In this document: one piece after another, positions 676-32,230 of the stretch | Layout of the letters: each line of letters starts with the position of its first letter | Numbering within the stretch: position 1 is the stretch's first letter | Origin: Octopus sinensis | Lineage: Eukaryota | Assembly (NCBI RefSeq): GCF_006345805.1 | Contig: NW_021833534.1 | Location: 1-34,296, forward strand | Direction: 5' to 3' | Length of the DNA stretch: 34,296 nucleotides | Translations under genes and position numbers: made by a program | Notes under the pieces: model-generated | What the model saw: only the letters and a program-made list of their open reading frames with translations | What the model was told of the DNA's origin: nothing | Database searches by the model: none

Positions 676-1103
676 GCAGGAGTGGTTGTGTGGTAAGTAG
701 CTTGCTAGCCAACCACATGGTTCTGGGTTCAGTCCCACTGCGTGGCACCTTGGGCAAGTGTCTTCTACTATAGCCTCGGGCCGACCAAAGCCTTGTGAGT
801 GGATTTGGTAGACGGAAACTGAAAAACGCCCGTCGTATATATGTATAATATATATATATATATATTATATATACGCGTGTGTTGTTTATTATGCGTCTGT
901 GTTTGTCCCCCTAGCATTCTTGACAACCGATGCTGGTGGTGTTTATGTCCCCGCTACTAGCGGTTTCGGCAAAGATACCGATAGAATAAGTACTGGGCTT
1001 ACAAAAAGAATAAGTCCCGGGGGTCGAGTTGCTCGATTAAAGGCGGTGCTCCAGCATGGCCGCAGTCAAATGACTGAAACAAGTAAAAGAGAGTAAAAGA
1101 GTA
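676..1103 (+). mobile_element. SINE family A (tRNA head, CORE-like box, internal microsatellite, AAAGAGT tail)
   Basis: A-box tggttgtgtggtaag, B-box gggttcagtccc, accttgggcaagtgtctt, tail gtaaaaga(gagt); about 12 related copies in the window. Confidence 0.9.
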
Positions 1104-3058: not shown

Positions 3059-3091
<33 letters not shown>

Positions 3092-3263
3092 CATATATAA
3101 GACGGGATTCTTCCAGTTTCTGTCTACCAAATCCACTCACAAGGCTTTGGTCGGCCCGAGGCTATAGCAGAAGACACTTGCCCAAGGTGCTACGCAGTGG
3201 GAATGAACCCGGATCCATGTGGTTGGTAAGCAAGCTACTTACCACACAGCCACTCATGCGCCT
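2834..3263 (-). mobile_element. SINE family A
   Basis: Reverse complement of the family A sequence, head to (ctctttta)n tail. Confidence 0.9.
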
Positions 3264-3660
3264 CCTGACTTTTAATATATATTTTGCATATTCTGTTATG
3301 TTTGATGGCCACTCTATCATGATTTTTTAGAGATAATAACTTATTTGAATTTCCAGTATATATATATATATATGTTATGGAGCAGTTACTGTCTATATCT
3401 CATTTAGAGAATTATTATTGCTATATATATATATATAGAAATATTAAAATAACTAAGTCTCTCTAAAAGAGAACAGCGGCAGCGTTCCCGGAAAATAATA
3501 GTTATCGCCATACTAATATGGCATTCTTATAAAAATAAGAAAAAAGAAAAAAGCTGTCCGCTTATTAGCTCCATGAGGCCATCGCCTTAAGTTAGCTATT
3601 TGATACACAAACTGTATCCATATAACCTTCGAACAAGGGAGGTCAGTCGCTCCACACTAC

Positions 3661-3722
3661 TGACCGGCAGCTACAGACGCGTTTCGGGGTATTGCCCCTT
3701 TTCAATGCAGCGTAGCCAGCCA
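3661..3722 (-). ncRNA. Type I hammerhead ribozyme, Penelope/retrozyme-like, core apparently intact
   Basis: Minus strand reads ctgca-UUGAAAA-gggg caata cccc-GAAA-cgcg-UC-tgtag: helix I ctgca/tgtag, helix II gggg/cccc, palindromic helix III acgcgt, U3-A8 instead of C3-G8, extended helix I with internal loop. Confidence 0.8.
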
Positions 3723-3753
3723 GTAGGTGTCGCTTCCGACAATCTACTGGCTG
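3717..3753. other. Strong GC-rich hairpin between the two hammerheads
   Basis: cagccagtag-g-tgtcg-cttc-cgaca-at-ctactggctg. Confidence 0.85.
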
Positions 3754-3773
3754 AGTGGATTTCATCCAGATAG

Positions 3774-3853
3774 TCTGGCTGACGAGCTACAAATGGATTT
3801 TTTGTAAGTAATATTACATTTAATTCATTAATAGCGACACAATTGTCCCAAAA
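3774..3853 (+). ncRNA. Hammerhead-like motif with long helix II, copy 1 (A14C lesion)
   Basis: tgg-CUGACGA-gcta..aatggatt..tgtaa/ttaca..aattcatt..tagc-GACA-caattg-UC-cca. Confidence 0.65.
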
Positions 3854-4307
3854 TAATCTGTATTTTTGTTATTTTTTACTTGCCCTGTCCGTGTGAGCTA
3901 ACAGTCGTACTGGCTTTCATGGGAATCATGTATTTTCGTGGTTGAAACCTTTTGGATTAACTGGTGGCTAGAGTGAGCAATATAGTGACCACTCTCTTAT
4001 ATTTATTTTGTAAAAATATTATAATATGTTATAAAATATTATAATAATCCAGGTTTCTCGTAGCACTAGGCCACTTGGTGTTGAATAAATATACTATTAA
4101 ATTAGTATCTAATTCTCTCACCCTTATTAATTAATTATAATTATGCTGCATTTATTTCTAAATGCTGTATTTGTTTTCCGTGAAAGTTTGGCGCGCTGTT
4201 GGTTGGGGCATTGAATTATAACGTCGGATGTAATCAATTGAACCACACGCGTATTTATCGTTATGGTAAATCTGGCGTTGTGATTGAGTGGATTTCATCC
4301 AGATAGT

Positions 4308-4385
4308 CTTGGCTGACGAGCTACAAATGGATTTTTTTGTAAGTAATATTACATTTAATTCATTAATAGCGAAACAATTGCCAAA
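4308..4385 (+). ncRNA. Hammerhead-like motif with long helix II, copy 2 (cleavage-site UC missing)
   Basis: ttgg-CUGACGA-gcta...tagc-GAAA-caattg-[no UC]-ccaa. Confidence 0.6.
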
Positions 4386-4558
4386 TAATCTGTATTTTTG
4401 TTATTTTTTACTTGCCCTGTCCGTGTGAGCTAACAGTCGTACTGGCTTTCATGGGAATCATGTATTTTCGTGGTTGAAACCTTTTGGATTAACTGGTGCT
4501 AGAGTGAGCAATATAGTGACACTCTCTTATATTTATTATTATATATATATATATATAT

Positions 4559-4613
<55 letters not shown>

Positions 4614-4620
4614 ATATATA

Positions 4621-4851
4621 TATATCAAAATAAGCAACAGGTATATCCAAGGTATTGCAGTACAATTGTTTCATGCTACTTCATTTTATTAAACGCTGTA
4701 AGTATTACTTCAGCTTTAAAATGTCGAGCAATCTTCAGCCACATACAGAATTTTTTAATTAAACGGACAATGCTCATTCACATAAAATGAAGTAGCATGA
4801 AACAATTGTACTACATTACCTTGGATATCCTTGTTGCTTACTTTGATTATA
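4621..4851. repeat. (TA)n-adjacent fold-back element: ~68 bp inverted arms with ~95 bp spacer
   Basis: 4621-4688 is the imperfect reverse complement of 4783-4851. Confidence 0.85.
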
Positions 4852-8561: not shown

Positions 8562-9325
8562 CTATATATATATATGTATGTAGTGTATATATGTATGTAT
8601 GTATATATAATGTATGTATGTATAATAGTATGTATGTATCTATAGTATATATGTACGCATGCATGCATGTATGTAGTATGCATGCATGCATGATATGTAG
8701 CATGCATGTATGTATGTATATATGTATGCATGCATGTATGTATGTATGTTTGTATGTATGTATGCATGTATGTATGTATGTATATATGTATGTATGTATG
8801 CATGCATGTATGTATGCATGCATGTATGTATGTATATATGTATGCATGCATGTATGTATGTATATATGTATGCATGCATGTATGTATGTATATATGTATG
8901 CATGCATGTATGTATGTATGTATGTTTGTATGTATGTATGCATGTATGTATGTATGTATATGTATGTATGTATGTATGTATTATGTATGTATGTATGTTT
9001 GTATGTATGTATGCATGATTTGTATGTATATGTATGTATGTATGTATGTATTATGTATGTATGTATGATGTATGTTGTATGTATGTATGCATGTATGTAT
9101 GTATGTTAGTATGTATGTATGTATATGTATGTATGTATGTATGTATGCATGCTGTATGTATTTATTATGTATGTTGGTGTAGTATGCATGTATGTATGTC
9201 TGTATGTATGTATGTATGTATGTATTAGTATGTATGTATGTATGTTATGTATTATGCATGTATGTTGTATGTATGTATATGTATGTATGTATGTCTGTAT
9301 GTATGTATGTATGTATTATGTATTA
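8478..9325. repeat. (TA)n then long (TATG)n/(TGCA) microsatellite
   Basis: Direct inspection. Confidence 0.95.
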
Positions 9326-9419
9326 CGATATTAGTGACACTGATTTTATACGTCTATAAAAAACTCTGATGCTTACAATCTCTAACATATCTCAATTTCA
9401 TCAAAGCTCAACACACACT

Positions 9420-9960: not shown

Positions 9961-10748
9961 CCTATTTCTTTACTACCCTCAAGGGGCTAAACACTGAGAG
10001 GACAAACAAGGACAGACAAACGGATTAAGTCGATTATATCGACCCCAGTGCATAACTGGTACTTATTTAATCGACCCTGAAAGGATGGAAGGCAAAGTCG
10101 ACCTCGGCGGAATTTGAACTCAGAACGTAGCGGCAGACGAAATGCCTATTTCTTTACTTCCCACGAGGGGCTAAACACTGAGAGGACAAACAAGGACAGA
10201 CAAACGGATTAAGTCGATTATATCGACCCCAGTGCATAACTGGTACTTATTTAATCGACCCTGAAAGGATGGAAGGCAAAGTCGACCTCGGCGGAATTTG
10301 AACTCAGAACGTAGCGGCAGACGAAATGCCTATTTCTTTACTTCCCACGAGGGGCTAAACACACAGAGGACAAACAAGGGCAGACAAACGGATTAAGTCG
10401 ATTATATCGACCCCAGTGCATAACTGGTACTTATTTAATCGACCCTGAAAGGATGGAAGGCAAAGTCGACCTCGGCGGAATTTGAACTCAGAACGTAGCG
10501 GCAGACGAAATGCCTATTTCTTTACTTCCCACGAGGGGCTAAACACTGAGAGGACAAACAAGGATAGACAAACGGATTAAGTCGATTATATCGACCCCAA
10601 TGCGTAATTGGTACTTATTTAATCGACCCCGAAAGGATGAAAGGCAAAGTCGACCTCAGCGGAATTTGAACTCAGAACGTAGCGGCAGACGAAATACCGC
10701 AAAGCATTTTGTCCGGCGTGCTAACGTTTCTGCCAGCTCGCCGCCTTA
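9961..10748 (-). mobile_element. SINE B head-to-tail tetramer (184 bp period) inside a B2-type SINE, 14 bp TSD
   Basis: Units start at 9961, 10145, 10329, 10513; tRNA head only on the last unit; acttattttattaa at 9947-9960 and 10749-10762. Confidence 0.9.
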
Positions 10749-10892
10749 ACTTATTTTATTAACCCCGAAAGCATGAAAGGTAAAGTCGACCTCGGCAGTT
10801 TTAGAACTCAGGACGTAAGACTGGCAGAAATGCCGCTGAGCATTTTGCCTGGTGCTCTAACGATTCTGCCAGCTCGCCGCCTAATGATTCTT

Positions 10893-13331: not shown

Positions 13332-13738
13332 ACTCTTTTACTTGTTTCAGTCATTTGACTGTGGCCATGCTGGAGCACCGCATTTAGTTGAACAAATCGA
13401 CCCCAGGACTTATTCTTTGTAAGCCTAGTACTAATTCTATCGGTCTCTTTTGCCGAACCGCTATGTTACGGGGACGTAAACACACCAGCATCGGTTGTCA
13501 AGCGATATTGAGGGGACAAACACAAACACAGAGACATATACACATACGTATATATATATATACATACATATATACGACGGGCTTCTTTCAGTTTCCGTCA
13601 ACCAGATCCACTCATAAGGCTTTGGTTGGCCCAAGGCTATAGTAGAAGACACTTGCCCAAGGTGCCACGCAGTGGGACTGAACACGGAACCATGTGGTTG
13701 GAAAGCAAGCTACTTACCGCACAGCCACTCCTACGACC
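13332..13738 (-). mobile_element. SINE family A
   Basis: Reverse complement of the family A sequence. Confidence 0.9.
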
Positions 13739-13841
13739 ATGAGAAAATTTAAAAAGCAGCATAATATTAGGCTAAAAAGTATTTGCGGAAAATGTTGAAG
13801 AAGCTAAAATTTCGACGGAAAACGTTGAGGAAGTTAAAGTT

Positions 13842-14704
13842 TTGTCGATGACAAATAGTTTCTCTAACACCGCAAAAGGTAACCTTGCAAGTGCGATATT
13901 TTCAAGGGACTGGATTGATGCCCGGCCTGTGGTCAACATTGGCGGTCTACTCAGTCTGGATAAGCTCCGCATCTCCATTGCACTCAAAAGTGGAAACCGA
14001 TGTCTATGGAATACTGAGATGTCGCTGCGATAAGCCCATTGACTTCACAGGCCTTCATGGTTTGTCTTGTGGCCTAAACTGCTGCTCGTTTCGCTCATCA
14101 CACCGAGCTAAACCTAACCATTCAGCGGGCCCTGGCTCGGGTTAATATCTTTTCTGTTCTGAATCCCGCAGGATTATCCGGAAATGATGGGAAGAGACCA
14201 GATGGTCTTACCCTTTATCCCTGGGTAAGAATTAGGTACCTCCTTTCGGGGTCGATTAAATAAGTACCGGTTACGCACTGGGGTCGATATAATCGACTTA
14301 ATCCGTTTGTCTGTATTTGTTTGTCCCCTCTATGTGTAGCCCCTTGTGGGCAGTAAAGAAATAAGAACTAGGTACCTCATCTGCGACGCCATAGTCAGTG
14401 ACTCCTCCCCACATCCTAGATACTGCGGTAAATGGGAGGATCATTGCTTCCGAAGACGAACGGAACAAAATCCTTAAGCATCGGACTTGTCCGAGAACTA
14501 TTTTTTTCCAGTCTGTGACGTTTGAGACGTTTGGAGGGGCTTGGGCCGCTGACAGCGAAGTTCATGTCATCATTAGCGGCTTGCCTTCTCACAGAGGTGT
14601 CAGGTGATGCTCGTGAGAGTGCTTGGCTGTTCCAACGCCTTAGCCTCGCCATCGCCCGTGGTAATGCCGCGATCGTGTTGGCTTGCTTTAGTAGGTTCTG
14701 CTGA
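13842..14704 (+). mobile_element. Decayed CRE-clade-like non-LTR retrotransposon 3' ORF end (CCHC knuckle plus restriction-like endonuclease)
   Basis: Frameshifted peptides DWIDARPV..LRISIAL / RCRCDKPIDFTGLHGLSC / RFAHHTELNLTIQRALARVNIFSVLNPAGLSGNDGKRPDGLTLYPW / RYLICDA / FETFG / LFQRLSLAIARGNAAIVL*. Confidence 0.85.
14241..14362 (+). mobile_element. 5'-truncated SINE B inserted into the retrotransposon, 16 bp TSD
   Basis: aagaattaggtacctc (14227-14242) and aagaactaggtacctc (14363-14378). Confidence 0.9.
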
Positions 14705-15357: not shown

Positions 15358-15852
15358 ATATATATTTTAAAAAATACAAAAAAAGATAATAAAAGACCGT
15401 CTTGGATAATGGTGAACGTCGTACCAGAGGTAATACGGGTTGGGGCTTTCTACGATAACAAACCATTGAATGAGTCCGTTCTCATTCAATTACTCTACTC
15501 AACTTCCTGGTTTATTTTCCTCGTCGAATTTCTAGCCTCACTAAATAGAATATGACTCATGCAATCATCGGTTTGGATTACATGATACAAGTTTCCAACG
15601 ATAGGAGTGTTTATACTATATCTTTTCCTTTTCTTTTTGTTTGTTTTTATATAAGGTTTTTGGTCGCTCGTATCTTGTTTGCAATTTGTTGTTGATTAGG
15701 AATTGATTAGTTTTCAAATTCGTGGTAATTAAACACGGATCCGTCTTTAAACCAGTTTAGAAATATAGAATCCATCCGTACTTGTTGTATATAAGCCATC
15801 TGCACTTGTGGGAACCTGTTATACTTATGGAATATGGGAATTAGATGTGCAT

Positions 15853-16277
15853 GTAGAAGCCAGACGAACCCGTTCGTTGTAGAAACCAGATGAATCTGTT
15901 CGTTGTAGAAGCCAGGTGAACCCGTTCGTTGTAGAAACCAGATGAACCCGTTCGTTGTAGAAACCAGATGAACCCGTTCGTTGTAGACGCCAGATGAACC
16001 TGTTCGTTGTAGAAGCTAGATGAATCCGTTCGTTGTAGAAGCCAGATGAATCCGTTCGTTGTAGACGCCAGGTGAACCCGTTCGTTGTAGAAGCCAGATG
16101 AACCCGTTCGTTGTAGAAGCTAGATGAACCCGTTCGTTGTAGAAGCCAGATGAACCCGTTCGGTGTAGAAGCCAGATGAACCCGTTTGTTGTAGAAGCTA
16201 GATGAACCTGTTCGTTGTAGAAGCCAGATAAATTCGTTGTTGAAACTAGATGAATTCGTTGTAAAAACTAGCTGAAC
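15853..16277. repeat. 26 bp minisatellite, about 16 units
   Basis: Unit tagaagccagatgaacccgttcgttg. Confidence 0.95.
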
Positions 16278-16682
16278 TGATTGTCTCGGAATGAGAGGGT
16301 GTCGTACTCCATTGTCCCAAACAGCCTTCAAAATCCCTTAAAAGGAACGGTGATTCGATTTCCTTACAGAGTGATGTCCTACCTGCTCGCGAAATAAACA
16401 TTTTTTCTTCAAAGTCTCTGGACATAGAAATTTACTAAAAGTATTAATTGAAAAAATAACAAAAATAGTTCGACTCAAGATTTCTGGACACAACCTGCCT
16501 TCTAAATTGTACATAGTTTTGTATGTGTGCAGTATAAGAGTCAGAACAAATATATTTATACAAATCTTGACTAAACTCAATGAAACAAACATGGAAAAAA
16601 TATTTTTACACTTTAATTTTTTTAATTTTCTTTTACAAAAGTTTTAAAGTTATTTTAAAGTCGTGAAAGGCTAAATAATAAT

Positions 16683-18597: not shown

Positions 18598-19031
18598 GAG
18601 GCGCAGGAGTGGCTGTGTGGTAAGTAGCTTGCTAACCAACCACATGGTTCCGGGTTCAGTCCCACTGCGTGGCATCTTGGGCAAGTGTCTTCTACTATAG
18701 CCCCGGACCGACCAATGCCTTCTGAGTGGATTTGGAAAGAAGGAAACTGAAAGAAGCCTGTCGTATATATGTATATATATATATGTGTGTGTATGTATGT
18801 GTGTTTGTGTGTCTGTGTTTGTCCCTCTAGCATTGCTTGACAACCGATGCTGGTGTGTTTACGTCCCCGTCACTTAGCGGTTCGGCAAAAGAGAACGATA
18901 GAATAAGTACTGGGCTTACAAAAGAATAAGTCCCGGGGTCGATTTGCTCGACTAAAGGCGGTGCTCCAGCATGGTCCCAGTCAAATGACTGAAACAAGTA
19001 AAAAGAAAAAGAAAGAAGAAAAAGAAAGAAG
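18598..19031 (+). mobile_element. SINE family A
   Basis: Full architecture. Confidence 0.9.
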
Positions 19032-22700: not shown

Positions 22701-22980
22701 TTCAATATGAATATAAACATACAACAACAAAAATGACTTCTTCAGCTCTAAAATTAGTCAACGAAGAAGTGAAAAGTTGAATCTACTTACTTGCAGTTAC
22801 CTCTGCATAAACAACAGATCAGGCAACAGTCAGCAGGTACTTTTTCTTTCATGCCGATTAGATATATATCTCAGTGTCTTTCTGGGTGTTTGTGAACGTC
22901 AAGAAAACCTATCCGTTGCCATGGTGGCCAATTACAGTACAAACTACTTAACGTTTTCGTTCCGATTACATCATTCAATA

Positions 22981-23751
22981 TATTTCGTCTGTCTTTACGT
23001 TCTGAGTTCGAATTCCGCCGAGGTCGACTTTGCCTGACATCCTTTCGAGGTCCATAAATTAAGTACCAGTTGCATACTGGGGTCGATCTAATCGACTGGT
23101 TCCCTCCACAAAAATGTCGGGCCTTGTGCCTAGAGTAGAAAAGAATATATTTCGTCTGTCTTTACGTTTTGAGTTCAAATTCTGCCGAGGTCGACTTTGC
23201 CTGTCATCCTTTCGCGGTCCATAAATTAAGTACCAGTTGCATACTGGGGTCGATCTAATCGACTGGTTCCCTCCACAAAATTTTCGGGCCTTGTGCCTAG
23301 AGTAGAAAAGAATATATTTCGTCTGTCTTTACGTTCTGAGTTCAAATTCTGCCGAGGTCGACTTTGCCTGTCATCCTTTCGAGGTCCATAAATTAAGTAC
23401 CAGTTGCATACTGGGGTCGATCTAATCGACTGGTTCCCTCCACAAAATTTTCGGGCCTTGTGCCTAGAGTAGAAAAGAATATATTTCGTCTGTCTTTACG
23501 TTCTGAGTTCAAATTCCGCCGAGGTCGACTTTGCCTTTCATCCTTTCGCGGTCCATAAATTAAGTACCAGTTGCGTACTGGGGTCGATCTAATCGACTGG
23601 GGCACCCTCCCCCCAAAATTTCAGGTCTTGTGCCTAGAGTAGAAAAGAATATATTTCGTCTGTCTTTACGTTCTGAGTTCAAATTTTATCGAGGTCGACT
23701 TTGCCTTTCATCCTTTCGAGGTCCATAAATTAAGTACCAGTTGCGTACTGG
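22981..23751 (+). mobile_element. Headless SINE B2 pentamer (~167 bp period)
   Basis: Units start tatttcgtc at 22981, 23148, 23315, 23482, 23652. Confidence 0.9.
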
Positions 23752-25459: not shown

Positions 25460-26030
25460 GCAATGTGGAATAAAGTACCTTGCTCAAGGACACGACGTGT
25501 CGCCCAGTTCAGTAATTGAACCCACAATCGTATGATCATGAACAGAACCCCCTAACTACTAAGCCACGCGCTTTCACTTCACTTCATTAATCTATAATTC
25601 ATATGAAACAGGTGATCGCCTTATTTTCATTACTCAAACGCTACAGGTGATCACGCTATCTGGGCAATAAAAACCCTTTAAACCTTCTGAAAATTTAATG
25701 AATAAATAACTGTACAGAGGATGACGAAAAGAACAAGATATGTCAATATTACTTCAATATTCAATCTGGCCACCAAGCAACTGGCCTGTCTAAATAAACA
25801 TTAAAAATTTAATCAGGAAGAGAAAACATACAAACTTAACCTAATAGCTATCTATGATCTAATGCAGAGAGTAACGTCAATTAGTAATATAAGTTACTGG
25901 GAAATACTTCAATGGACAAATTAAACGAATAGTTATGTATAAGTGAGTATGTTTCAGTAGTAAATAAAATGGTGATTTAGTAAGAAGCCAGACCTTGTTA
26001 AGAACAGTACAATACTGGTAATAATTGTTT

Positions 26031-26442
26031 CTTTATTACCCACAAGCGGCTAAACACAGAGGGGACAAACAAGGACAGACAAAGGGATTGAGTCGATAAC
26101 ATCGACCCCAGTGCGTAACTAGTACTTAATTTATCGACCCCGAAAGGATGAAAGGCAAAGTCGACTTCGGTAGAATTTGAACTCAGAACGTAGCGGCAGA
26201 CGAAATACCTATTTCTTTACTACCCACAAGGGACTAAACATAGAGGGGACAAACAAGGACAGACAAAGAGATTAAGTCAATTACATCGACCCCAGTGCGT
26301 AACGGGTACTTAATTTATCGACCCCGAAAGGATGAAAGGCAAAGTCGACCTCGGCGGAATTTGAACTCAGAACGTAGCGGCGGACGAAATACGGCTACGC
26401 ATTTCGCCCGGTGTGGTTAACGTTTCTGCCAGTTCGCCGCCC
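26031..26442 (-). mobile_element. SINE B dimer
   Basis: Junction gaaataggtatttcgtc on the minus strand. Confidence 0.9.
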
Positions 26443-26560
26443 TAACAATACTGGCAATAATAGCAGTTACAACAATAATGGTATTAAGTAGCAATTTGCA
26501 TTTTAAAATCGCTCTTTATTATCCATCATTTTAGTGTTGTCCAACTTATCAAATTTTAGT

Positions 26561-27050: not shown

Positions 27051-27762
27051 GAAACCTTAATAAATCTCTTTAAAGTTTTTCTGAGAGTCTTACATGACAG
27101 TAAGAAACCTAAATAAATCCCTTTAAAGTTTTTCTGGGAGTCTTACATAACAGTAAGAAACCTTAATAAATTTCGGGCCTTGTACCTAGAGTAGAAAGGA
27201 ATATATTTCGCCTGTCTTTACGTTCTGAGTTCAAACTCTGCTGAGGTCGACTTTGCCTGTCATCCCTTCGAGGTCCATAAATTAAGTTCCAGTTGCGTAC
27301 TGGGGTCGATCTAATCGATTGGTCCCCTCCACAAAAATTTCGGGCCTTGAGTCTTGAGTAGAAAAGAATATATTTTGTCTATCTTTACGTTCTGAGTTCA
27401 AATTCCGCCGAGGTCTACTTTGCCTTTCATCCTTTCGAGGTCCATAAATTAAGTACCAGTTGCGTACTGGTGTCGATCTAATCGACTGCCCCCCGCTCCC
27501 CCAAAATTTCGGGCCTTGTGCCTAGAATGGAAAAGATATCAAACGTAATATCGATATTTCGTTTTTATATTTGGTTTGCAAGCTGATTGATGTGAACTTG
27601 TGTAATGACTCTTTAAGTTTTAATTTTAAAGTTTTTTCTGAGAGTCTTATATGACAGTAAGAAACCTTAATAAATCCCTTTAAAGTTTTTCTGAGAGTCT
27701 TACATGACAGTAAGAAACCTTAATAAATCCCTTTAAAGTTTTTCTGAGAGTCTTACATAACA
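27051..27762. repeat. 53 bp minisatellite in two blocks (about 27051-27170 and 27626-27762) split by a headless SINE B2 multimer (about 27168-27538)
   Basis: Unit gaaaccttaataaatccctttaaagtttttctgagagtcttacatgacagtaa. Confidence 0.85.
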
Positions 27763-28135: not shown

Positions 28136-28535
28136 GGCAGAAACGTTAGCACGCCGGGCGAAATGTTTGCGGTATTTCGCCTGCCGTTACGTTCTGAGTT
28201 CAAATTCCGCCGAGGTCGACTTTGCCTTTCATCCTTTCGGGGTCGATAAATTAAGTACCAGTTACGCACTGGGGGTCGAAGTAATTGACTTAATACCTAT
28301 GTCTGTCCTTGTTTGTCCCCTCTGTGTTTAGCCCCTTGTGGGTAGTAAAGAAATGGGTATTTCGTCAACCGTTACGTTCTGAGTTCAAATTCCGCCGAGG
28401 TCGACTTTGCCTTTCATCCTTTCGGGGTCGATAAATTAAGTAGCAGTTACGCACTGGGGTCGATGTAATCGACTTAATCCGTTTGTCTGTCCTTGTTTGT
28501 CCCCTCTGTGTTTAGCCCCTTGTGGGTAGTAAAAA
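28136..28535 (+). mobile_element. SINE B dimer
   Basis: Junction gaaatgggtatttcgtc. Confidence 0.9.
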
Positions 28536-28545
28536 AATATACATA

Positions 28546-29049: not shown

Positions 29050-29385
29050 ATGTGTGTGTGTGTGTGTGTGTATGTTTGTGTGTCCGTGTTTGTCCCCCCC
29101 CACACACACACACAACATCTCTTGACAACCGATGCTGGTGTGTTTACGTCCTTGTAACCTAGCGGTTCGGCAAAAGAGACCGATAGAATAAGTACTAGGC
29201 CTACAAACAATAAGTCCTGGGGTCGATTTGCTCGACTAAAGGCGGTGCTCCAGCATGGCCACAGTCACATGACTGAAACAAGTAATAGAGTAAAAGAGTA
29301 CTGGGGGTCGATTTGCTCGACTAAAATCCTTCAGGGCGGTGCTCCAGCATGGCCGCAGTGCAAACACCGAAAACGGGTATAAGAT
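28546..29385 (+). mobile_element. Two adjacent SINE A copies plus a duplicated 3' end
   Basis: About 28546-28845 degenerate, 28858-29300 full, 29301-29385 repeated tail. Confidence 0.8.
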
Positions 29386-30565: not shown

Positions 30566-30661
30566 CTTTTTATTAAAGCTGTAAAATTATCACACAACTG
30601 TTACTCTGAGTTTCACGTTCCCGTTCATCGGACAGTTGTGATAAATACTGTATACTCTACC

Positions 30662-30709
30662 TATGTATGTATGTATGTATGTATGTATGTATGTATGTAT
30701 GTATGTATG

Positions 30710-30743
<34 letters not shown>

Positions 30744-30769
30744 TGTATATATGTATGTATGTATGTATG

Positions 30770-30803
<34 letters not shown>

Positions 30804-30825
30804 TATATGTATGTATGTATGTATG

Positions 30826-30859
<34 letters not shown>

Positions 30860-31062
30860 TGTAGTATGTATGTATGTATGTATGTATGTAGTAGTATATA
30901 TGTATGTATGTATGTATGATATATGTATGTATTATGTATGTATGTATATGTATGTATGTATTATGTATGTATGTATGTATGTATATATGTAGTGTATGTA
31001 TATGTATGTATGTATATAGTATGTATGTAGTATGTATGTATGTATATATGTATGTATGTATG

Positions 31063-31096
<34 letters not shown>

Positions 31097-31134
31097 TGTA
31101 TGTTATTGTATGTATGTATGTATGTAGTAGTATG

Positions 31135-31168
<34 letters not shown>

Positions 31169-31547
31169 TGTATGTATTGTATGTAGGTATGTATGTATGT
31201 ATGTATATATGTATGTATGTATGTTATGTATGTATGTATGTATATGATGTATGTTGTATTTATGTATGTTATATTTATGTATGTATTATGTATGTATGTA
31301 TATATGTTGATTATGTATGTATATAGTATGTATGTATGTATGTATTATGTATGTTATGTATGTAGTATGTATGTATTGTATGTATGTATATATGTATGTA
31401 TGTATGTATGATATATATGTTGTATGTATGTATGTATGTTATATATGTATGTATGTAGTATTATGTATTATGTATGTATTATGTATGTATGTATGTTTTA
31501 TATGTATGTATGTATGTATGGTGTATGTATATATGTATGTATGTATG

Positions 31548-31581
<34 letters not shown>

Positions 31582-32230
31582 TGTATGTTATATGTATGTA
31601 TGTATGTTGTATGTATGTATGTATATGTGTATGTATGTATGTATGTATGTATGTATGTATGCATGTATGTATGTATGTACGTATGTATATATATAGTCTG
31701 GTACTTATTCTAGCAGTCTGTTTTAGCAAACTGCTTAGTTACGATGGACGTGAACGACTACCATCGGTTGTCAAGCAGTGCTGGGTATCAGGGTCATCAA
31801 AACACATACACACATACATACATACATACATACATACATACATACATACATACATACATGCATGCATGCATACATACATACATACATACATACATACATA
31901 CATACATACATACATGCATACATACATACATACATACATACATACATACATGCATGCATACATAATACATACATACATACATACATACATACATACATAC
32001 ATGGCATGCATACATACATACATACATACATCATACATACATACATACATACATACATATAATACATACATACATACATGCATGCAGACATAATACATAC
32101 ATACATACATACATACATACATACATACCTAATACATACATGACATACATAATACATACATACATACATACATACATACAACATACATACATACAACATA
32201 CTACATACATACATACCATACATCATACAT
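30662..32230. repeat. (TATG)n (~1 kb) and (CATA)n (~430 bp) facing each other across a SINE A fragment
   Basis: Direct inspection; SINE A piece at about 31695-31805. Confidence 0.9.

What the first reader, a model, noticed from the sequence alone, without database searches (positions are those of the whole stretch)
3661..3853. Two hammerhead ribozyme motifs of opposite polarity about 50 nt apart, separated by a strong hairpin
Seen: a minus-strand hammerhead (3661-3722), a GC-rich hairpin (3717-3753) and a plus-strand hammerhead (3774-3853) form one compact structured cassette. Established: Penelope-like elements and retrozymes carry hammerheads in the sense polarity, while paired ribozymes on both strands are typical of viroid-like and satellite circular RNAs that use symmetric rolling-circle replication. 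Inference: this may be a genomic ambisense retrozyme-like unit whose transcripts from both strands self-cleave. The mundane alternative is a fusion of two unrelated Penelope pseudo-LTR fragments.
Basis: partly seen in the sequence, partly recalled or inferred. Interest (0 to 1): 0.85.

Follow-up and report, generated by a model that had tools for sequence, protein, structure and literature searches.

The report
Head-to-head hammerhead-bearing retroelement relics
Two unrelated short mobile-element fragments, each with a hammerhead ribozyme motif of the kind linked to Penelope-like retrotransposons, sit head to head inside a TA microsatellite of an octopus-like genome; this layout is already described for such elements and is not a two-strand self-cleaving replicon.

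Summary

- **Minus-strand motif (3722→3661).** It has a complete type I hammerhead scaffold: a 6-bp helix I, a UAC bulge, a 4-bp helix II, GAAA, a palindromic ACGCGU helix III and a GUC cleavage site. Its core carries U3-A8 in place of C3-G8. No Rfam model reports it, yet a descriptor match this good arose in only about 0.3% of shuffled windows.
- **Hairpin (3717-3753).** It is real, with dG -26 kcal/mol and z -6.2.
- **Plus-strand motif (3773-3853).** It is only a sub-threshold Hammerhead_1 hit (14.2 bits against a cut-off of 34). Its core reads GACA where GAAA is needed.

The plus motif lies in a repeat, X (3752-4007), that recurs at 4285-4537. That second copy has neither the minus motif nor the hairpin upstream of it, and it has lost the cleavage-site U. 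The minus-strand element has no detectable similarity to X or to the spacer between the X copies. The whole 1.1-kb composite is flanked by (TA)n on both sides.

These features match published Penelope-like insertion architecture:
- partial tandems;
- an adjacent inverted copy;
- TA-microsatellite targets;
- opposite-strand hammerhead pairs;
- U3-A8 core variants.

The ambisense-replicon reading is not supported. Family-wide testing was impossible because no host genome was available.

The parts
3422..3437 (.). Left (TA)8 microsatellite flank of the composite insertion. A further (TA)8.5 lies at 3357-3373.
   Evidence: TRF; sequence
3448..3751 (-). Element M, a non-coding unit read on the minus strand. 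Its 5' end is at 3751 and its 3' end abuts (TA)n near 3448-3466; that 3' boundary is approximate. It has no detectable similarity to X or Y in either orientation.
   Evidence: Local alignments with dinucleotide-shuffle controls give z <= 1.25. No other copy in the window.
3717..3753 (.). Strong hairpin. Its core arms are 3719-3726 and 3744-3751, and it ends at the M|X junction (3751|3752). On the minus strand its 3' arm overlaps the distal helix I strand of the minus hammerhead (3722-3715).
   Evidence: strand folding: dG -26.0/-25.1 kcal/mol, z -6.2/-6.3
3661..3722 (-). Type I hammerhead motif of element M. It has a 6-bp helix I plus an 8-bp distal stem across a UAC/U internal loop, and a core UUGAAAA with U3-A8. 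Helix II is GGGG/CCCC with loop CAAUA, followed by GAAA, a palindromic ACGCGU helix III and C17 at 3676. The predicted cleavage is between 3676 and 3675.
   Evidence: Coordinates. Only descriptor hit in the window, with chance 0.003-0.07 per window. MFE z -3.0. The dimer cofold forms an intermolecular ACGCGU helix. Not reported by Rfam.
3752..4007 (+). Repeat X, copy A. On the favoured model it is the 5'-truncated unit of a partial tandem, equivalent to an upstream pseudo-LTR.
   Evidence: BLAST 3752-4023 against 4285-4555: 94.9% over 276 nt. Alignment. Exact blocks.
3773..3853 (+). Decayed type I hammerhead-like motif in X copy A. It reads CUGACGA (3779-3785), then helix II GCUA...UAGC with a long AU-rich extension, then GACA (3836-3839, where A14 has become C), then C-AAUU-G and GUC (3845-3847). 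Helix I has only 3 contiguous bp.
   Evidence: Rfam RF00163: 14.2 bits, below the gathering score of 34. Coordinates. Relaxed descriptor.
4008..4284 (+). Y, the non-coding region between the two X copies. It starts with an AT-rich 10-mer repeat at 4016-4046. X plus Y make a 533-nt unit.
   Evidence: No long stop-free frame.
4285..4537 (+). Repeat X, copy B. Its 3' end runs into (TA)n.
4306..4384 (+). Hammerhead-like motif in X copy B. CUGACGA (4313-4319) and GAAAC (4371-4375) are intact, but the cleavage triplet reads GCC instead of GUC because U16.1 is lost through an indel.
   Evidence: Alignment. Repeat blocks D3 and D4. No Rfam hammerhead hit at E<=10.
4528..4625 (.). Right (TA)~50 microsatellite flank of the composite insertion.
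   Evidence: TRF

Best explanation
The locus is a 1.1-kb composite (about 3448-4537) of two unrelated, non-coding, hammerhead-bearing retroelement fragments. They are of the Penelope-like-element (PLE) pseudo-LTR / non-LTR retrozyme kind, joined 5' end to 5' end inside a (TA)n microsatellite of an octopod-like genome.

**The two elements**
- Element M is on the minus strand. It carries a structurally complete, dimer-type type I hammerhead with the known U3-A8 core covariation.
- Element X-Y-X is on the plus strand. It is 1.5 copies of a 533-nt unit, and each X copy carries a decayed hammerhead of the same dimer type.

**How active relatives would work (inferred from the published families, not shown here)**
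1. Tandem copies are transcribed.
2. Two hammerheads pair through the palindromic helix III to form a double hammerhead.
3. Unit-length RNAs are cut out and can be circularised.
4. A PLE reverse transcriptase/endonuclease copies them back into TA-rich targets.

**How the head-to-head layout most likely arose (inferred)**
It most likely came from one integration in which both sides of a break in the (TA)n tract primed cDNA synthesis. The two cDNAs were then joined at their 5' ends. Alternatively, two successive insertions occurred at a hot spot.

**At this locus**
The elements are probably inert. Both plus-strand cores are damaged, and the minus-strand hammerhead is a solo copy of a type that needs a partner.
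For: **Both motifs match the published architecture of metazoan type I hammerheads.**
- That architecture is helix I 6 bp, helix II 4 bp, and helix III 1-2 bp with a 2-4 nt palindromic loop, acting as dimers (PMC4209133).
- M matches it exactly.
- M's loop 2, CAAUA, is one A shorter than the Rfam consensus CAAAUA.
- The M dimer is predicted to form an intermolecular ACGCGU helix, 6.1 kcal/mol more stable than two monomers.
- U3-A8 in place of C3-G8 is a reported natural variant in PLE hammerheads, with about 1300 hits in Schistosoma mansoni.

**The motifs are unlikely to be chance.**
- M is the only descriptor hit in 34 kb, with chance 0.003-0.07 per window.
- The plus motif is the one Rfam Hammerhead_1 alignment, and it covers the full model.
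- Copy B has GAAAC where copy A has GACAC, and copy A has GUC where copy B has GCC. One change per lineage from a canonical core would explain both.

**The layout matches published PLE insertions.**
- X-Y-X is a partial tandem with 94.9% identity and 533-nt spacing.
- An inverted element lies directly at its 5' end.
- The outward-facing 3' ends meet (TA)n on both sides.
- There is no TA remnant at the 5'-5' junction 3751|3752.
- PLE insertions are described as 5'-truncated partial tandems, often with an adjacent inverted copy, hammerheads in the pseudo-LTRs and a (TA)n target bias (PMC8557442).
- A purified PLE protein cleaves and extends both DNA strands (PMC11167929).
- Opposite-strand hammerhead pairs 100-700 bp apart have been reported.
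- Non-LTR retrozymes are related to PLE pseudo-LTRs (bioRxiv 10.64898/2026.07.22.740005).

**The host fits.**
- A repeat-derived ORF in the window best matches Octopus bimaculoides proteins.
- A squid genome holds 235 Hammerhead_1 loci and Penelope elements (PMC6962438).
Against: - No Rfam hammerhead model reaches its threshold for either motif, and M is not reported at all. M's assignment therefore rests on a hand-written descriptor made after seeing the motif.
- No PLE reverse transcriptase or GIY-YIG reading frame lies near the locus, which has no long stop-free frame. The window as a whole has few long ORFs, and 9 selected stop-free segments, none of them at the locus, had no Pfam hit. The link to PLEs is thus by architecture and literature only.
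- In described PLE insertions the inverted copy is the same element. Here M and X/Y share no detectable similarity.
- Only one M copy and two X copies could be examined. Scans of the viral, metagenome and prokaryote collections found no relatives. Family consensus, copy number and covariation are therefore unknown.
- Helix I of the plus motif is weak, and its long helix II is unusual.
- No cleavage or expression data exist.
Confidence: 0.6

Rival explanations
1. Ambisense retrozyme-like or viroid-like unit. On this view the minus hammerhead, the hairpin and the plus hammerhead form one conserved cassette. Transcripts from both strands would self-cleave and circularise, as in symmetric rolling-circle replication.
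For: Two hammerhead-shaped motifs of opposite polarity lie 51 nt apart around a very stable hairpin. That closeness is unlikely for independent random placement.
Against: - The second copy of the plus-motif repeat (4285-4537) has unrelated sequence upstream, with no hairpin and no minus motif.
- The unit between the plus-strand cleavage positions (3848 to about 4380) does not contain the minus motif.
- Only one minus motif is present, so no unit-length minus RNA can be released.
- Both plus copies have lesions at invariant core positions.
- Both motifs are dimer-type.
- Opposite-strand pairs are already explained by PLE insertion architecture.
Confidence: 0.04
2. Only the minus motif descends from a real hammerhead. 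The plus motif is a chance resemblance inside an unrelated tandem repeat, X-Y-X, and the two simply abut.
For: - The plus motif scores 14.2 bits against a gathering score of 34, and only when 231 nt are searched.
- A descriptor loose enough to accept it gives 0.54 hits per shuffled window.
- Helix I has 3 bp.
- Helix II carries a 38-nt insertion relative to the model.
- Neither copy has a complete core, and copy B gives no Rfam hit.
Against: - The E-value for that one family in this 231-nt stretch is about 3e-4, which is 1.4 divided by 4227 families. The motif also sits 51 nt from another hammerhead.
- CUGACGAG matches the Rfam consensus exactly.
- ACAAUUGU is a perfect 8-nt palindrome, as expected for dimer-type helix III.
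- The G10.1-C11.1 pair is present.
- Between them the two copies hold every canonical core state.
- The X-Y-X partial tandem ending in (TA)n is itself PLE/retrozyme-like.
Confidence: 0.2
3. Both motifs are chance look-alikes in AT-rich repetitive DNA, and the locus has nothing to do with ribozymes.
For: No Rfam hit reaches gathering anywhere in the window. The descriptors were written after the motifs had been pointed out.
Against: - Chance is 0.003 per window for a match as good as M.
- M has extra features not required by the descriptor: a UAC bulge, an 8-bp distal stem, a consensus-like loop 2 and a palindromic helix III.
- M's two core deviations are exactly the compensatory pair U3-A8.
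- A second hammerhead-like motif lies 51 nt away.
Confidence: 0.05
4. The elements are the same as in the best explanation, but the head-to-head layout arose from two separate insertions at different times into a TA-microsatellite hot spot, not from one double-primed event.
For: M and X/Y are unrelated in sequence, which is what independent events would give. PLEs prefer (TA)n targets, so repeated hits at one microsatellite are plausible.
Against: No TA-rich remnant separates the two 5' ends at 3751|3752. The second insertion would have had to land exactly at the edge of the first, or delete the remaining target.
Confidence: 0.25

Closest known systems
Hammerheads in the pseudo-LTRs of Penelope-like elements, including the U3-A8 core variant (Cervera & de la Pena 2014, PMC4209133; Craig et al. 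2021, PMC8557442)
   Same: - The hammerheads are type I with a minimal palindromic helix III that implies action as dimers.
- The U3-A8 covariation is present in M.
- The motifs lie in a repeat that forms a partial tandem.
- An inverted element sits at the 5' end.
- The flanks are (TA)n.
- The hammerheads lie on opposite strands, 51 nt apart; pairs 100-700 bp apart have been reported for these elements.
   Different: - There is no RT/GIY-YIG reading frame at the locus.
- The inverted partner is a different sequence, not a copy of the same element.
- M looks like the 'canonical' type (helix I 6 bp, helix II 4 bp, UAC bulge), not the min-HHR type with a 7-8 bp helix II.
- The plus motif has an unusually long helix II of about 50 nt.
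Metazoan non-LTR retrozymes (Cervera & de la Pena 2020, PMC7229834; Li et al. 2026 bioRxiv 10.64898/2026.07.22.740005)
   Same: These are short non-coding tandem units, each carrying a type I hammerhead, in an animal genome. They are related to PLE pseudo-LTRs and found in intergenic settings.
   Different: - Only 1.5 units are present.
- The hammerheads in both X copies are damaged.
- Circular RNA expression is untested.
- The 533-nt unit is longer than I recall for the described animal retrozymes (about 170-400 nt; this figure is from memory and was not checked in the papers read).
Tandem-repeat (satellite-type) hammerheads of Schistosoma and newts, as summarised by Rfam RF00163 Hammerhead_1
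   Same: The plus motif aligns to the full RF00163 model. M shares the 6-bp helix I, the 4-bp helix II, a CAA(A)UA-type loop 2 and the ACG..CGU palindrome with the model consensus printed.
   Different: Neither motif reaches the gathering score. M has U3-A8 and a helix III shorter by 2 nt. The elements are not arranged as a satellite array.
Viroid-like and satellite circular RNAs with ribozymes in both polarities, including hepatitis-delta-like circular RNAs with hammerheads (PMC7936874)
   Same: Hammerhead motifs of both polarities lie close together.
   Different: The two motifs are not in one repeat unit. This is a DNA locus made of two unrelated elements. There is one minus copy only, and the plus cores are damaged.
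Plant LTR retrozymes (Cervera et al. 2016, PMC4918200)
   Same: They are non-autonomous, with direct repeats carrying a hammerhead around a short non-coding centre.
   Different: Plant retrozymes use type III hammerheads in true LTRs of about 350 bp. From memory, and not checked here, they also have a primer-binding site, a polypurine tract and 4-bp target duplications, and are thought to be mobilised by Ty3/gypsy-type elements. Here the hammerheads are type I and dimer-type, and the target is (TA)n with no visible duplication.

Membership tests
Hammerhead ribozyme, type I (minus motif, element M) | Conserved catalytic core: C3 U4 G5 A6 N7 G8 A9, G12 A13 A14, the A15.1-U16.1 pair, and H17 | tested here: inconclusive
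   All positions are canonical except C3 to U and G8 to A, which together keep the 3-8 Watson-Crick pair. This variant is reported in natural PLE hammerheads (PMC4209133). Its activity in this context is unknown.
Hammerhead ribozyme, type I (minus motif, element M) | Three helices around the core, with helix I open and helix II closed by a loop | tested here: met
   Helix I has 6 bp plus an 8-bp distal stem, and helix II has 4 bp with a G10.1-C11.1 pair. Helix III is A-U and C-G around a GC loop, which can form only as an intermolecular 6-bp ACGCGU duplex.
Hammerhead ribozyme, type I (minus motif, element M) | Score at or above the Rfam gathering threshold for a hammerhead covariance model | tested here: not met
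   No hammerhead model reports it at gathering or at E<=10, even in a 74-nt search.
Hammerhead ribozyme, type I (minus motif, element M) | Site-specific self-cleavage leaving a 2',3'-cyclic phosphate and a 5'-OH | not testable with these tools
   This needs in vitro transcription of monomer and dimer constructs.
Hammerhead ribozyme, type I (plus motif, X copies A and B) | Conserved catalytic core | tested here: not met
   Copy A reads GACA at 3836-3839, so A14 has become C. Copy B reads GCC instead of GUC, so U16.1 is lost.
Hammerhead ribozyme, type I (plus motif, X copies A and B) | Rfam RF00163 gathering score (34 bits) | tested here: not met
   Copy A scores 14.2 bits. Copy B gives no hit at E<=10.
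Non-LTR retrozyme | Head-to-tail tandem units, each with a type I hammerhead | tested here: inconclusive
   X-Y-X is 1.5 units of 533 nt, with a hammerhead-like motif in each X. Both motifs are damaged, and larger arrays elsewhere could not be searched.
Non-LTR retrozyme | Expressed as unit-length circular RNA | not testable with these tools
   No transcriptome data are available.
Penelope-like element (autonomous) | A reading frame encoding reverse transcriptase plus GIY-YIG endonuclease | tested here: not met
   The longest stop-free frame overlapping 3450-4560 is 95 aa and consists largely of TA-repeat translation. The window has few long ORFs, and 9 selected stop-free segments elsewhere in it had no Pfam hit. 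The fragments could at most be non-autonomous or pseudo-LTR remnants.
Penelope-like element (insertion architecture) | A 5'-truncated partial tandem (pseudo-LTR), an adjacent inverted copy, a microsatellite (TA)n target, and a hammerhead in the repeat | tested here: inconclusive
   The topology fits. However, the inverted partner M is not a copy of X/Y.
Ambisense circular-RNA replicon (viroid-like or retroviroid-like) | Ribozymes of both polarities contained in the same repeat unit | tested here: not met
   The minus motif lies outside the 533-nt unit defined by the two plus motifs, and it is absent upstream of X copy B.

The most novel reading that the evidence does not exclude
M-hairpin-X could be a recurrent module with fixed spacing in this cephalopod genome. 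That would make it a retrozyme family whose DNA copies encode hammerheads of both polarities, so that both transcripts are processed and circularised. On this reading, copy B of X would be a 5'-truncated remnant that lost the minus half. The local evidence argues against this, but only a search of the source genome can exclude it.
Probability: 0.04. Interest if true: 0.75.

Novelty: new member of a known kind. Interest (0 to 1): 0.22.

Why it matters
- **Annotation.** As read here, the locus adds little beyond annotation. It shows PLE/retrozyme-type hammerhead relics in an octopod-like genome, arranged head to head in a TA microsatellite as already described for these elements.
- **Detection.** The structurally best motif carries the U3-A8 core pair and is invisible to every Rfam hammerhead model. 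Genome surveys that rely on Rfam, such as the count of 235 Hammerhead_1 loci in a squid genome, probably undercount this class.
- **Mechanism.** A 5'-to-5' junction between two different elements, flanked by (TA)n on both sides, would be a useful natural example of double-primed integration. It would suggest that a PLE-type machine can use two different RNA templates in one event.

Tried and rejected
1. **Rfam searches.** I ran one at gathering on the whole window and four at E<=10 (3300-4200; 3640-3870, 231 nt; 4270-4410, 141 nt; 3655-3728, 74 nt). They returned one sub-threshold Hammerhead_1 hit for the plus motif and nothing for the minus motif or copy B.
2. **Relatives outside the window.** I looked for other copies to test co-occurrence. 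Exact 20-23-mers of M and X found nothing in viral contigs, metagenome contigs or prokaryotic genome contigs. No eukaryotic genome collection was available, so the decisive family-level test could not be run.
3. **Homology among M, X and Y.** I tested M against X and Y in both orientations. An apparent weak match disappeared under dinucleotide-shuffle controls. The two arms are not an inverted repeat of each other.
4. **Source record.** Exact-protein look-up of two window ORFs found nothing on record.
5. **Pfam.** Nine selected stop-free segments from elsewhere in the window gave no hits.
6. **tRNA or SINE head.** No tRNA genes were found in the window.
7. **ORF trick not attempted.** I considered querying short ORFs that span the locus to retrieve other copies from the protein collection. 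I dropped the idea because a high-copy repeat ORF returned only two annotated Octopus proteins, which shows that raw cephalopod ORFs are not indexed.
8. **A paper I could not read.** The Przybilski & Hammann 2007 paper on exchanges of the C3-G8 pair is not held. The expectation that U3-A8 keeps activity rests on the natural variant reported in PMC4209133 and on my own recollection.

Full report
**Setting.** The window is repeat-rich, non-coding eukaryotic DNA. It holds many microsatellites and SINE-like tandem and inverted repeats. It has no tRNA genes and no long meaningful reading frames. A repeat-derived ORF best matches two Octopus bimaculoides proteins at 53-61% identity, so the host is probably an octopod or a near relative.

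**Checking the observation.**

All three features are at the stated coordinates.

*Hairpin.* The hairpin at 3717-3753 is solid, with dG -26.0/-25.1 kcal/mol and z -6.2/-6.3. None of 200 shuffles folded as well.

*Minus-strand motif.* Read 3722→3661, it runs as follows:
- UGGCUGGC, then a UAC bulge;
- GCUGCA (helix I, 5' strand);
- UUGAAAA (core);
- GGGG-CAAUA-CCCC (helix II);
- GAAA, then C-GC-G, then UC with the cleavage site after it;
- UGUAGC (helix I, 3' strand), then a bulged U, then GCCGGUCA.

Every invariant hammerhead position is canonical except C3 to U and G8 to A. Those two positions pair with each other, so the change is compensatory.

No Rfam hammerhead model reports this motif, even at E<=10 in a 74-nt search. 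A hand-written descriptor that accepts either core pair finds it as the only hit in 34 kb. In 300 dinucleotide-shuffled windows, the expected number of hits was 0.07 for the base descriptor. It was 0.003 for helix I >=6 bp with helix II >=4 bp. A dimer-type descriptor that demands a palindromic helix III again finds only this motif.

*Plus-strand motif.* This motif is weaker. Rfam Hammerhead_1 aligns over its full length to 3773-3853 at 14.2 bits, against a gathering score of 34. The hit appears only when 231 nt are searched. The motif has three defects:
- The invariant GAAA reads GACA (3836-3839).
- Helix I has three contiguous pairs.
- Helix II carries a long AU-rich extension.

A descriptor loose enough to accept it gives 0.54 chance hits per window.

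**Anatomy of the locus.**

A self-comparison shows that 3752-4023 recurs at 4285-4555 with 94.9% identity over 276 nt. The exact blocks are spaced 530-535 nt apart. I call this repeat X; it carries the plus motif.

Homology starts at 3752 and 4285, directly after the hairpin's 3' arm. Upstream of copy B the sequence is different, with no hairpin and no minus motif.

Copy B keeps CUGACGAG and has an intact GAAAC, but its cleavage triplet reads GCC instead of GUC. Each copy therefore has its own core lesion. Between them they hold every canonical state, which is what decay from an intact ancestral hammerhead would leave.

The region to the left, 3448-3751, holds the minus motif and the hairpin; I call it M. 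It shows no significant similarity to X or to the spacer Y (4008-4284) in either orientation.

(TA)8 lies at 3422-3437, and (TA)~50 lies at 4528-4625. The composite M | X-A Y X-B thus has its two outward-facing 3' ends in TA microsatellite. There is no TA remnant at the inner 5'-5' junction 3751|3752.

**Why the two motifs are probably real hammerhead descendants.**

Cervera and de la Pena describe most metazoan type I hammerheads as follows. Helix I has 6 bp, helix II has 4 bp, and helix III has 1-2 bp capped by a 2-4 nt palindromic loop, and the ribozymes work as dimers (PMC4209133). M fits this exactly. Its ACGCGU segment is predicted to form an intermolecular helix in a dimer, 6.1 kcal/mol more stable than two monomers.

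The plus motif's ACAAUUGU is a perfect 8-nt palindrome of the same kind. The same paper reports the U3-A8 covariation in PLE hammerheads of Schistosoma mansoni. M's loop 2, CAAUA, differs by one A from the Rfam consensus CAAAUA.

**What it most likely is.**

PLE insertions are described as having these features (PMC8557442):
- they are strongly 5'-truncated;
- they are arranged as partial tandems that create pseudo-LTRs;
- they often have an inverted 5'-truncated copy directly adjacent;
- they carry hammerheads in the pseudo-LTRs;
- they show a bias for (TA)n and similar microsatellite targets.

Three further published findings bear on the locus:
- A purified PLE protein cleaves and extends both strands of its target (PMC11167929).
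- Pairs of hammerheads 100-700 bp apart on opposite strands were noted in S. mansoni.
- Animal non-LTR retrozymes are related to PLE pseudo-LTRs.

Cephalopod genomes hold Penelope elements and Hammerhead_1 loci.

The locus matches this picture. X-A Y X-B is a 1.5-unit partial tandem of a 533-nt non-coding unit. M is an inverted hammerhead-bearing element at its 5' end, and TA microsatellite lies outside both.

The one departure is that M is not a copy of X/Y. I infer a single integration in which both sides of a break primed cDNA synthesis from two different RNAs. Two successive insertions cannot be ruled out.

**Why it is not an ambisense unit.**
- The minus motif lies outside the 533-nt unit bounded by the plus-strand cleavage positions.
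- The minus motif is absent from the second copy's upstream flank.
- Only one minus motif exists, so no unit-length minus RNA could be released.
- Both plus copies are damaged at invariant positions.
- Both motifs are of the type that needs a tandem partner.

**Limits.**

No eukaryotic genome collection was available. Scans of the viral, metagenome and prokaryote collections with M and X 20-23-mers found nothing. Copy number, family consensus, covariation and genome-wide co-occurrence therefore remain untested, and cleavage is untested.

The origin of the hairpin is unexplained. It ends at the M|X junction and competes with the distal helix I stem of the minus hammerhead.

**Verdict.** This is an ordinary, probably inert relic of known element types. 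It is a new member of a known kind. Its practical lesson is that U3-A8 hammerheads escape Rfam models.

Noticed in passing
window 3719-3751: The hairpin ends at the junction between element M and repeat X (3751|3752). On the minus strand its 3' arm overlaps the distal helix I strand of the minus hammerhead (3722-3715), so the two structures compete. It could be the natural 5' structure of M, a snap-back product of reverse transcription, or a folding switch.
   Followed up: partly
window 3836-3850 versus 4371-4382: Two or three of the roughly seven differences between X copies A and B fall in the 14-nt GAAAC...GUC half of the hammerhead-like motif. The following 116 nt are identical. By a rough estimate this clustering is only about 5% likely by chance.
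   Followed up: partly
window 13776-14700 (+): A run of stop-free segments in several frames looks like a decayed retroelement protein, with a Cys/His-rich stretch followed by '...GKRPDG...'. None has a Pfam hit at E<=1.
   Followed up: partly
window 9961-10812, 22945-23745, 27168-27634, 26024-26507, 28272-28545: These are arrays and dispersed or inverted copies of 167-nt and 184-nt repeat units, SINE-like or satellite-like. A translated 167-nt-unit ORF best matches uncharacterised Octopus bimaculoides proteins at 53-61% identity, which points to an octopod-like host.
   Followed up: partly
window 8590-9350 and 30600-32200: Long (ATGT)n/(ATGC)n-type microsatellite arrays. The array near 31800-31970 is in the opposite orientation to those at 8800-8980 and 30650-30820, giving 160-170-nt inverted matches. 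These arrays also produce the strong GC-skew excursions in the composition profile.
   Followed up: no
window 15774-16293: A tandem array of about 14 copies of a 26-nt unit. It overlaps the window's 168-aa minus-strand ORF (15825-16331), which is made of repeated peptide units.
   Followed up: no
window 676-847, 3088-3259, 13564-13732, 18739-18922, 29113-29291: Several copies of a SINE-like repeat of about 170-180 nt, in both orientations and 87-93% identical. Each abuts a TA/TG microsatellite. One copy lies 190 nt left of the composite insertion.
   Followed up: no
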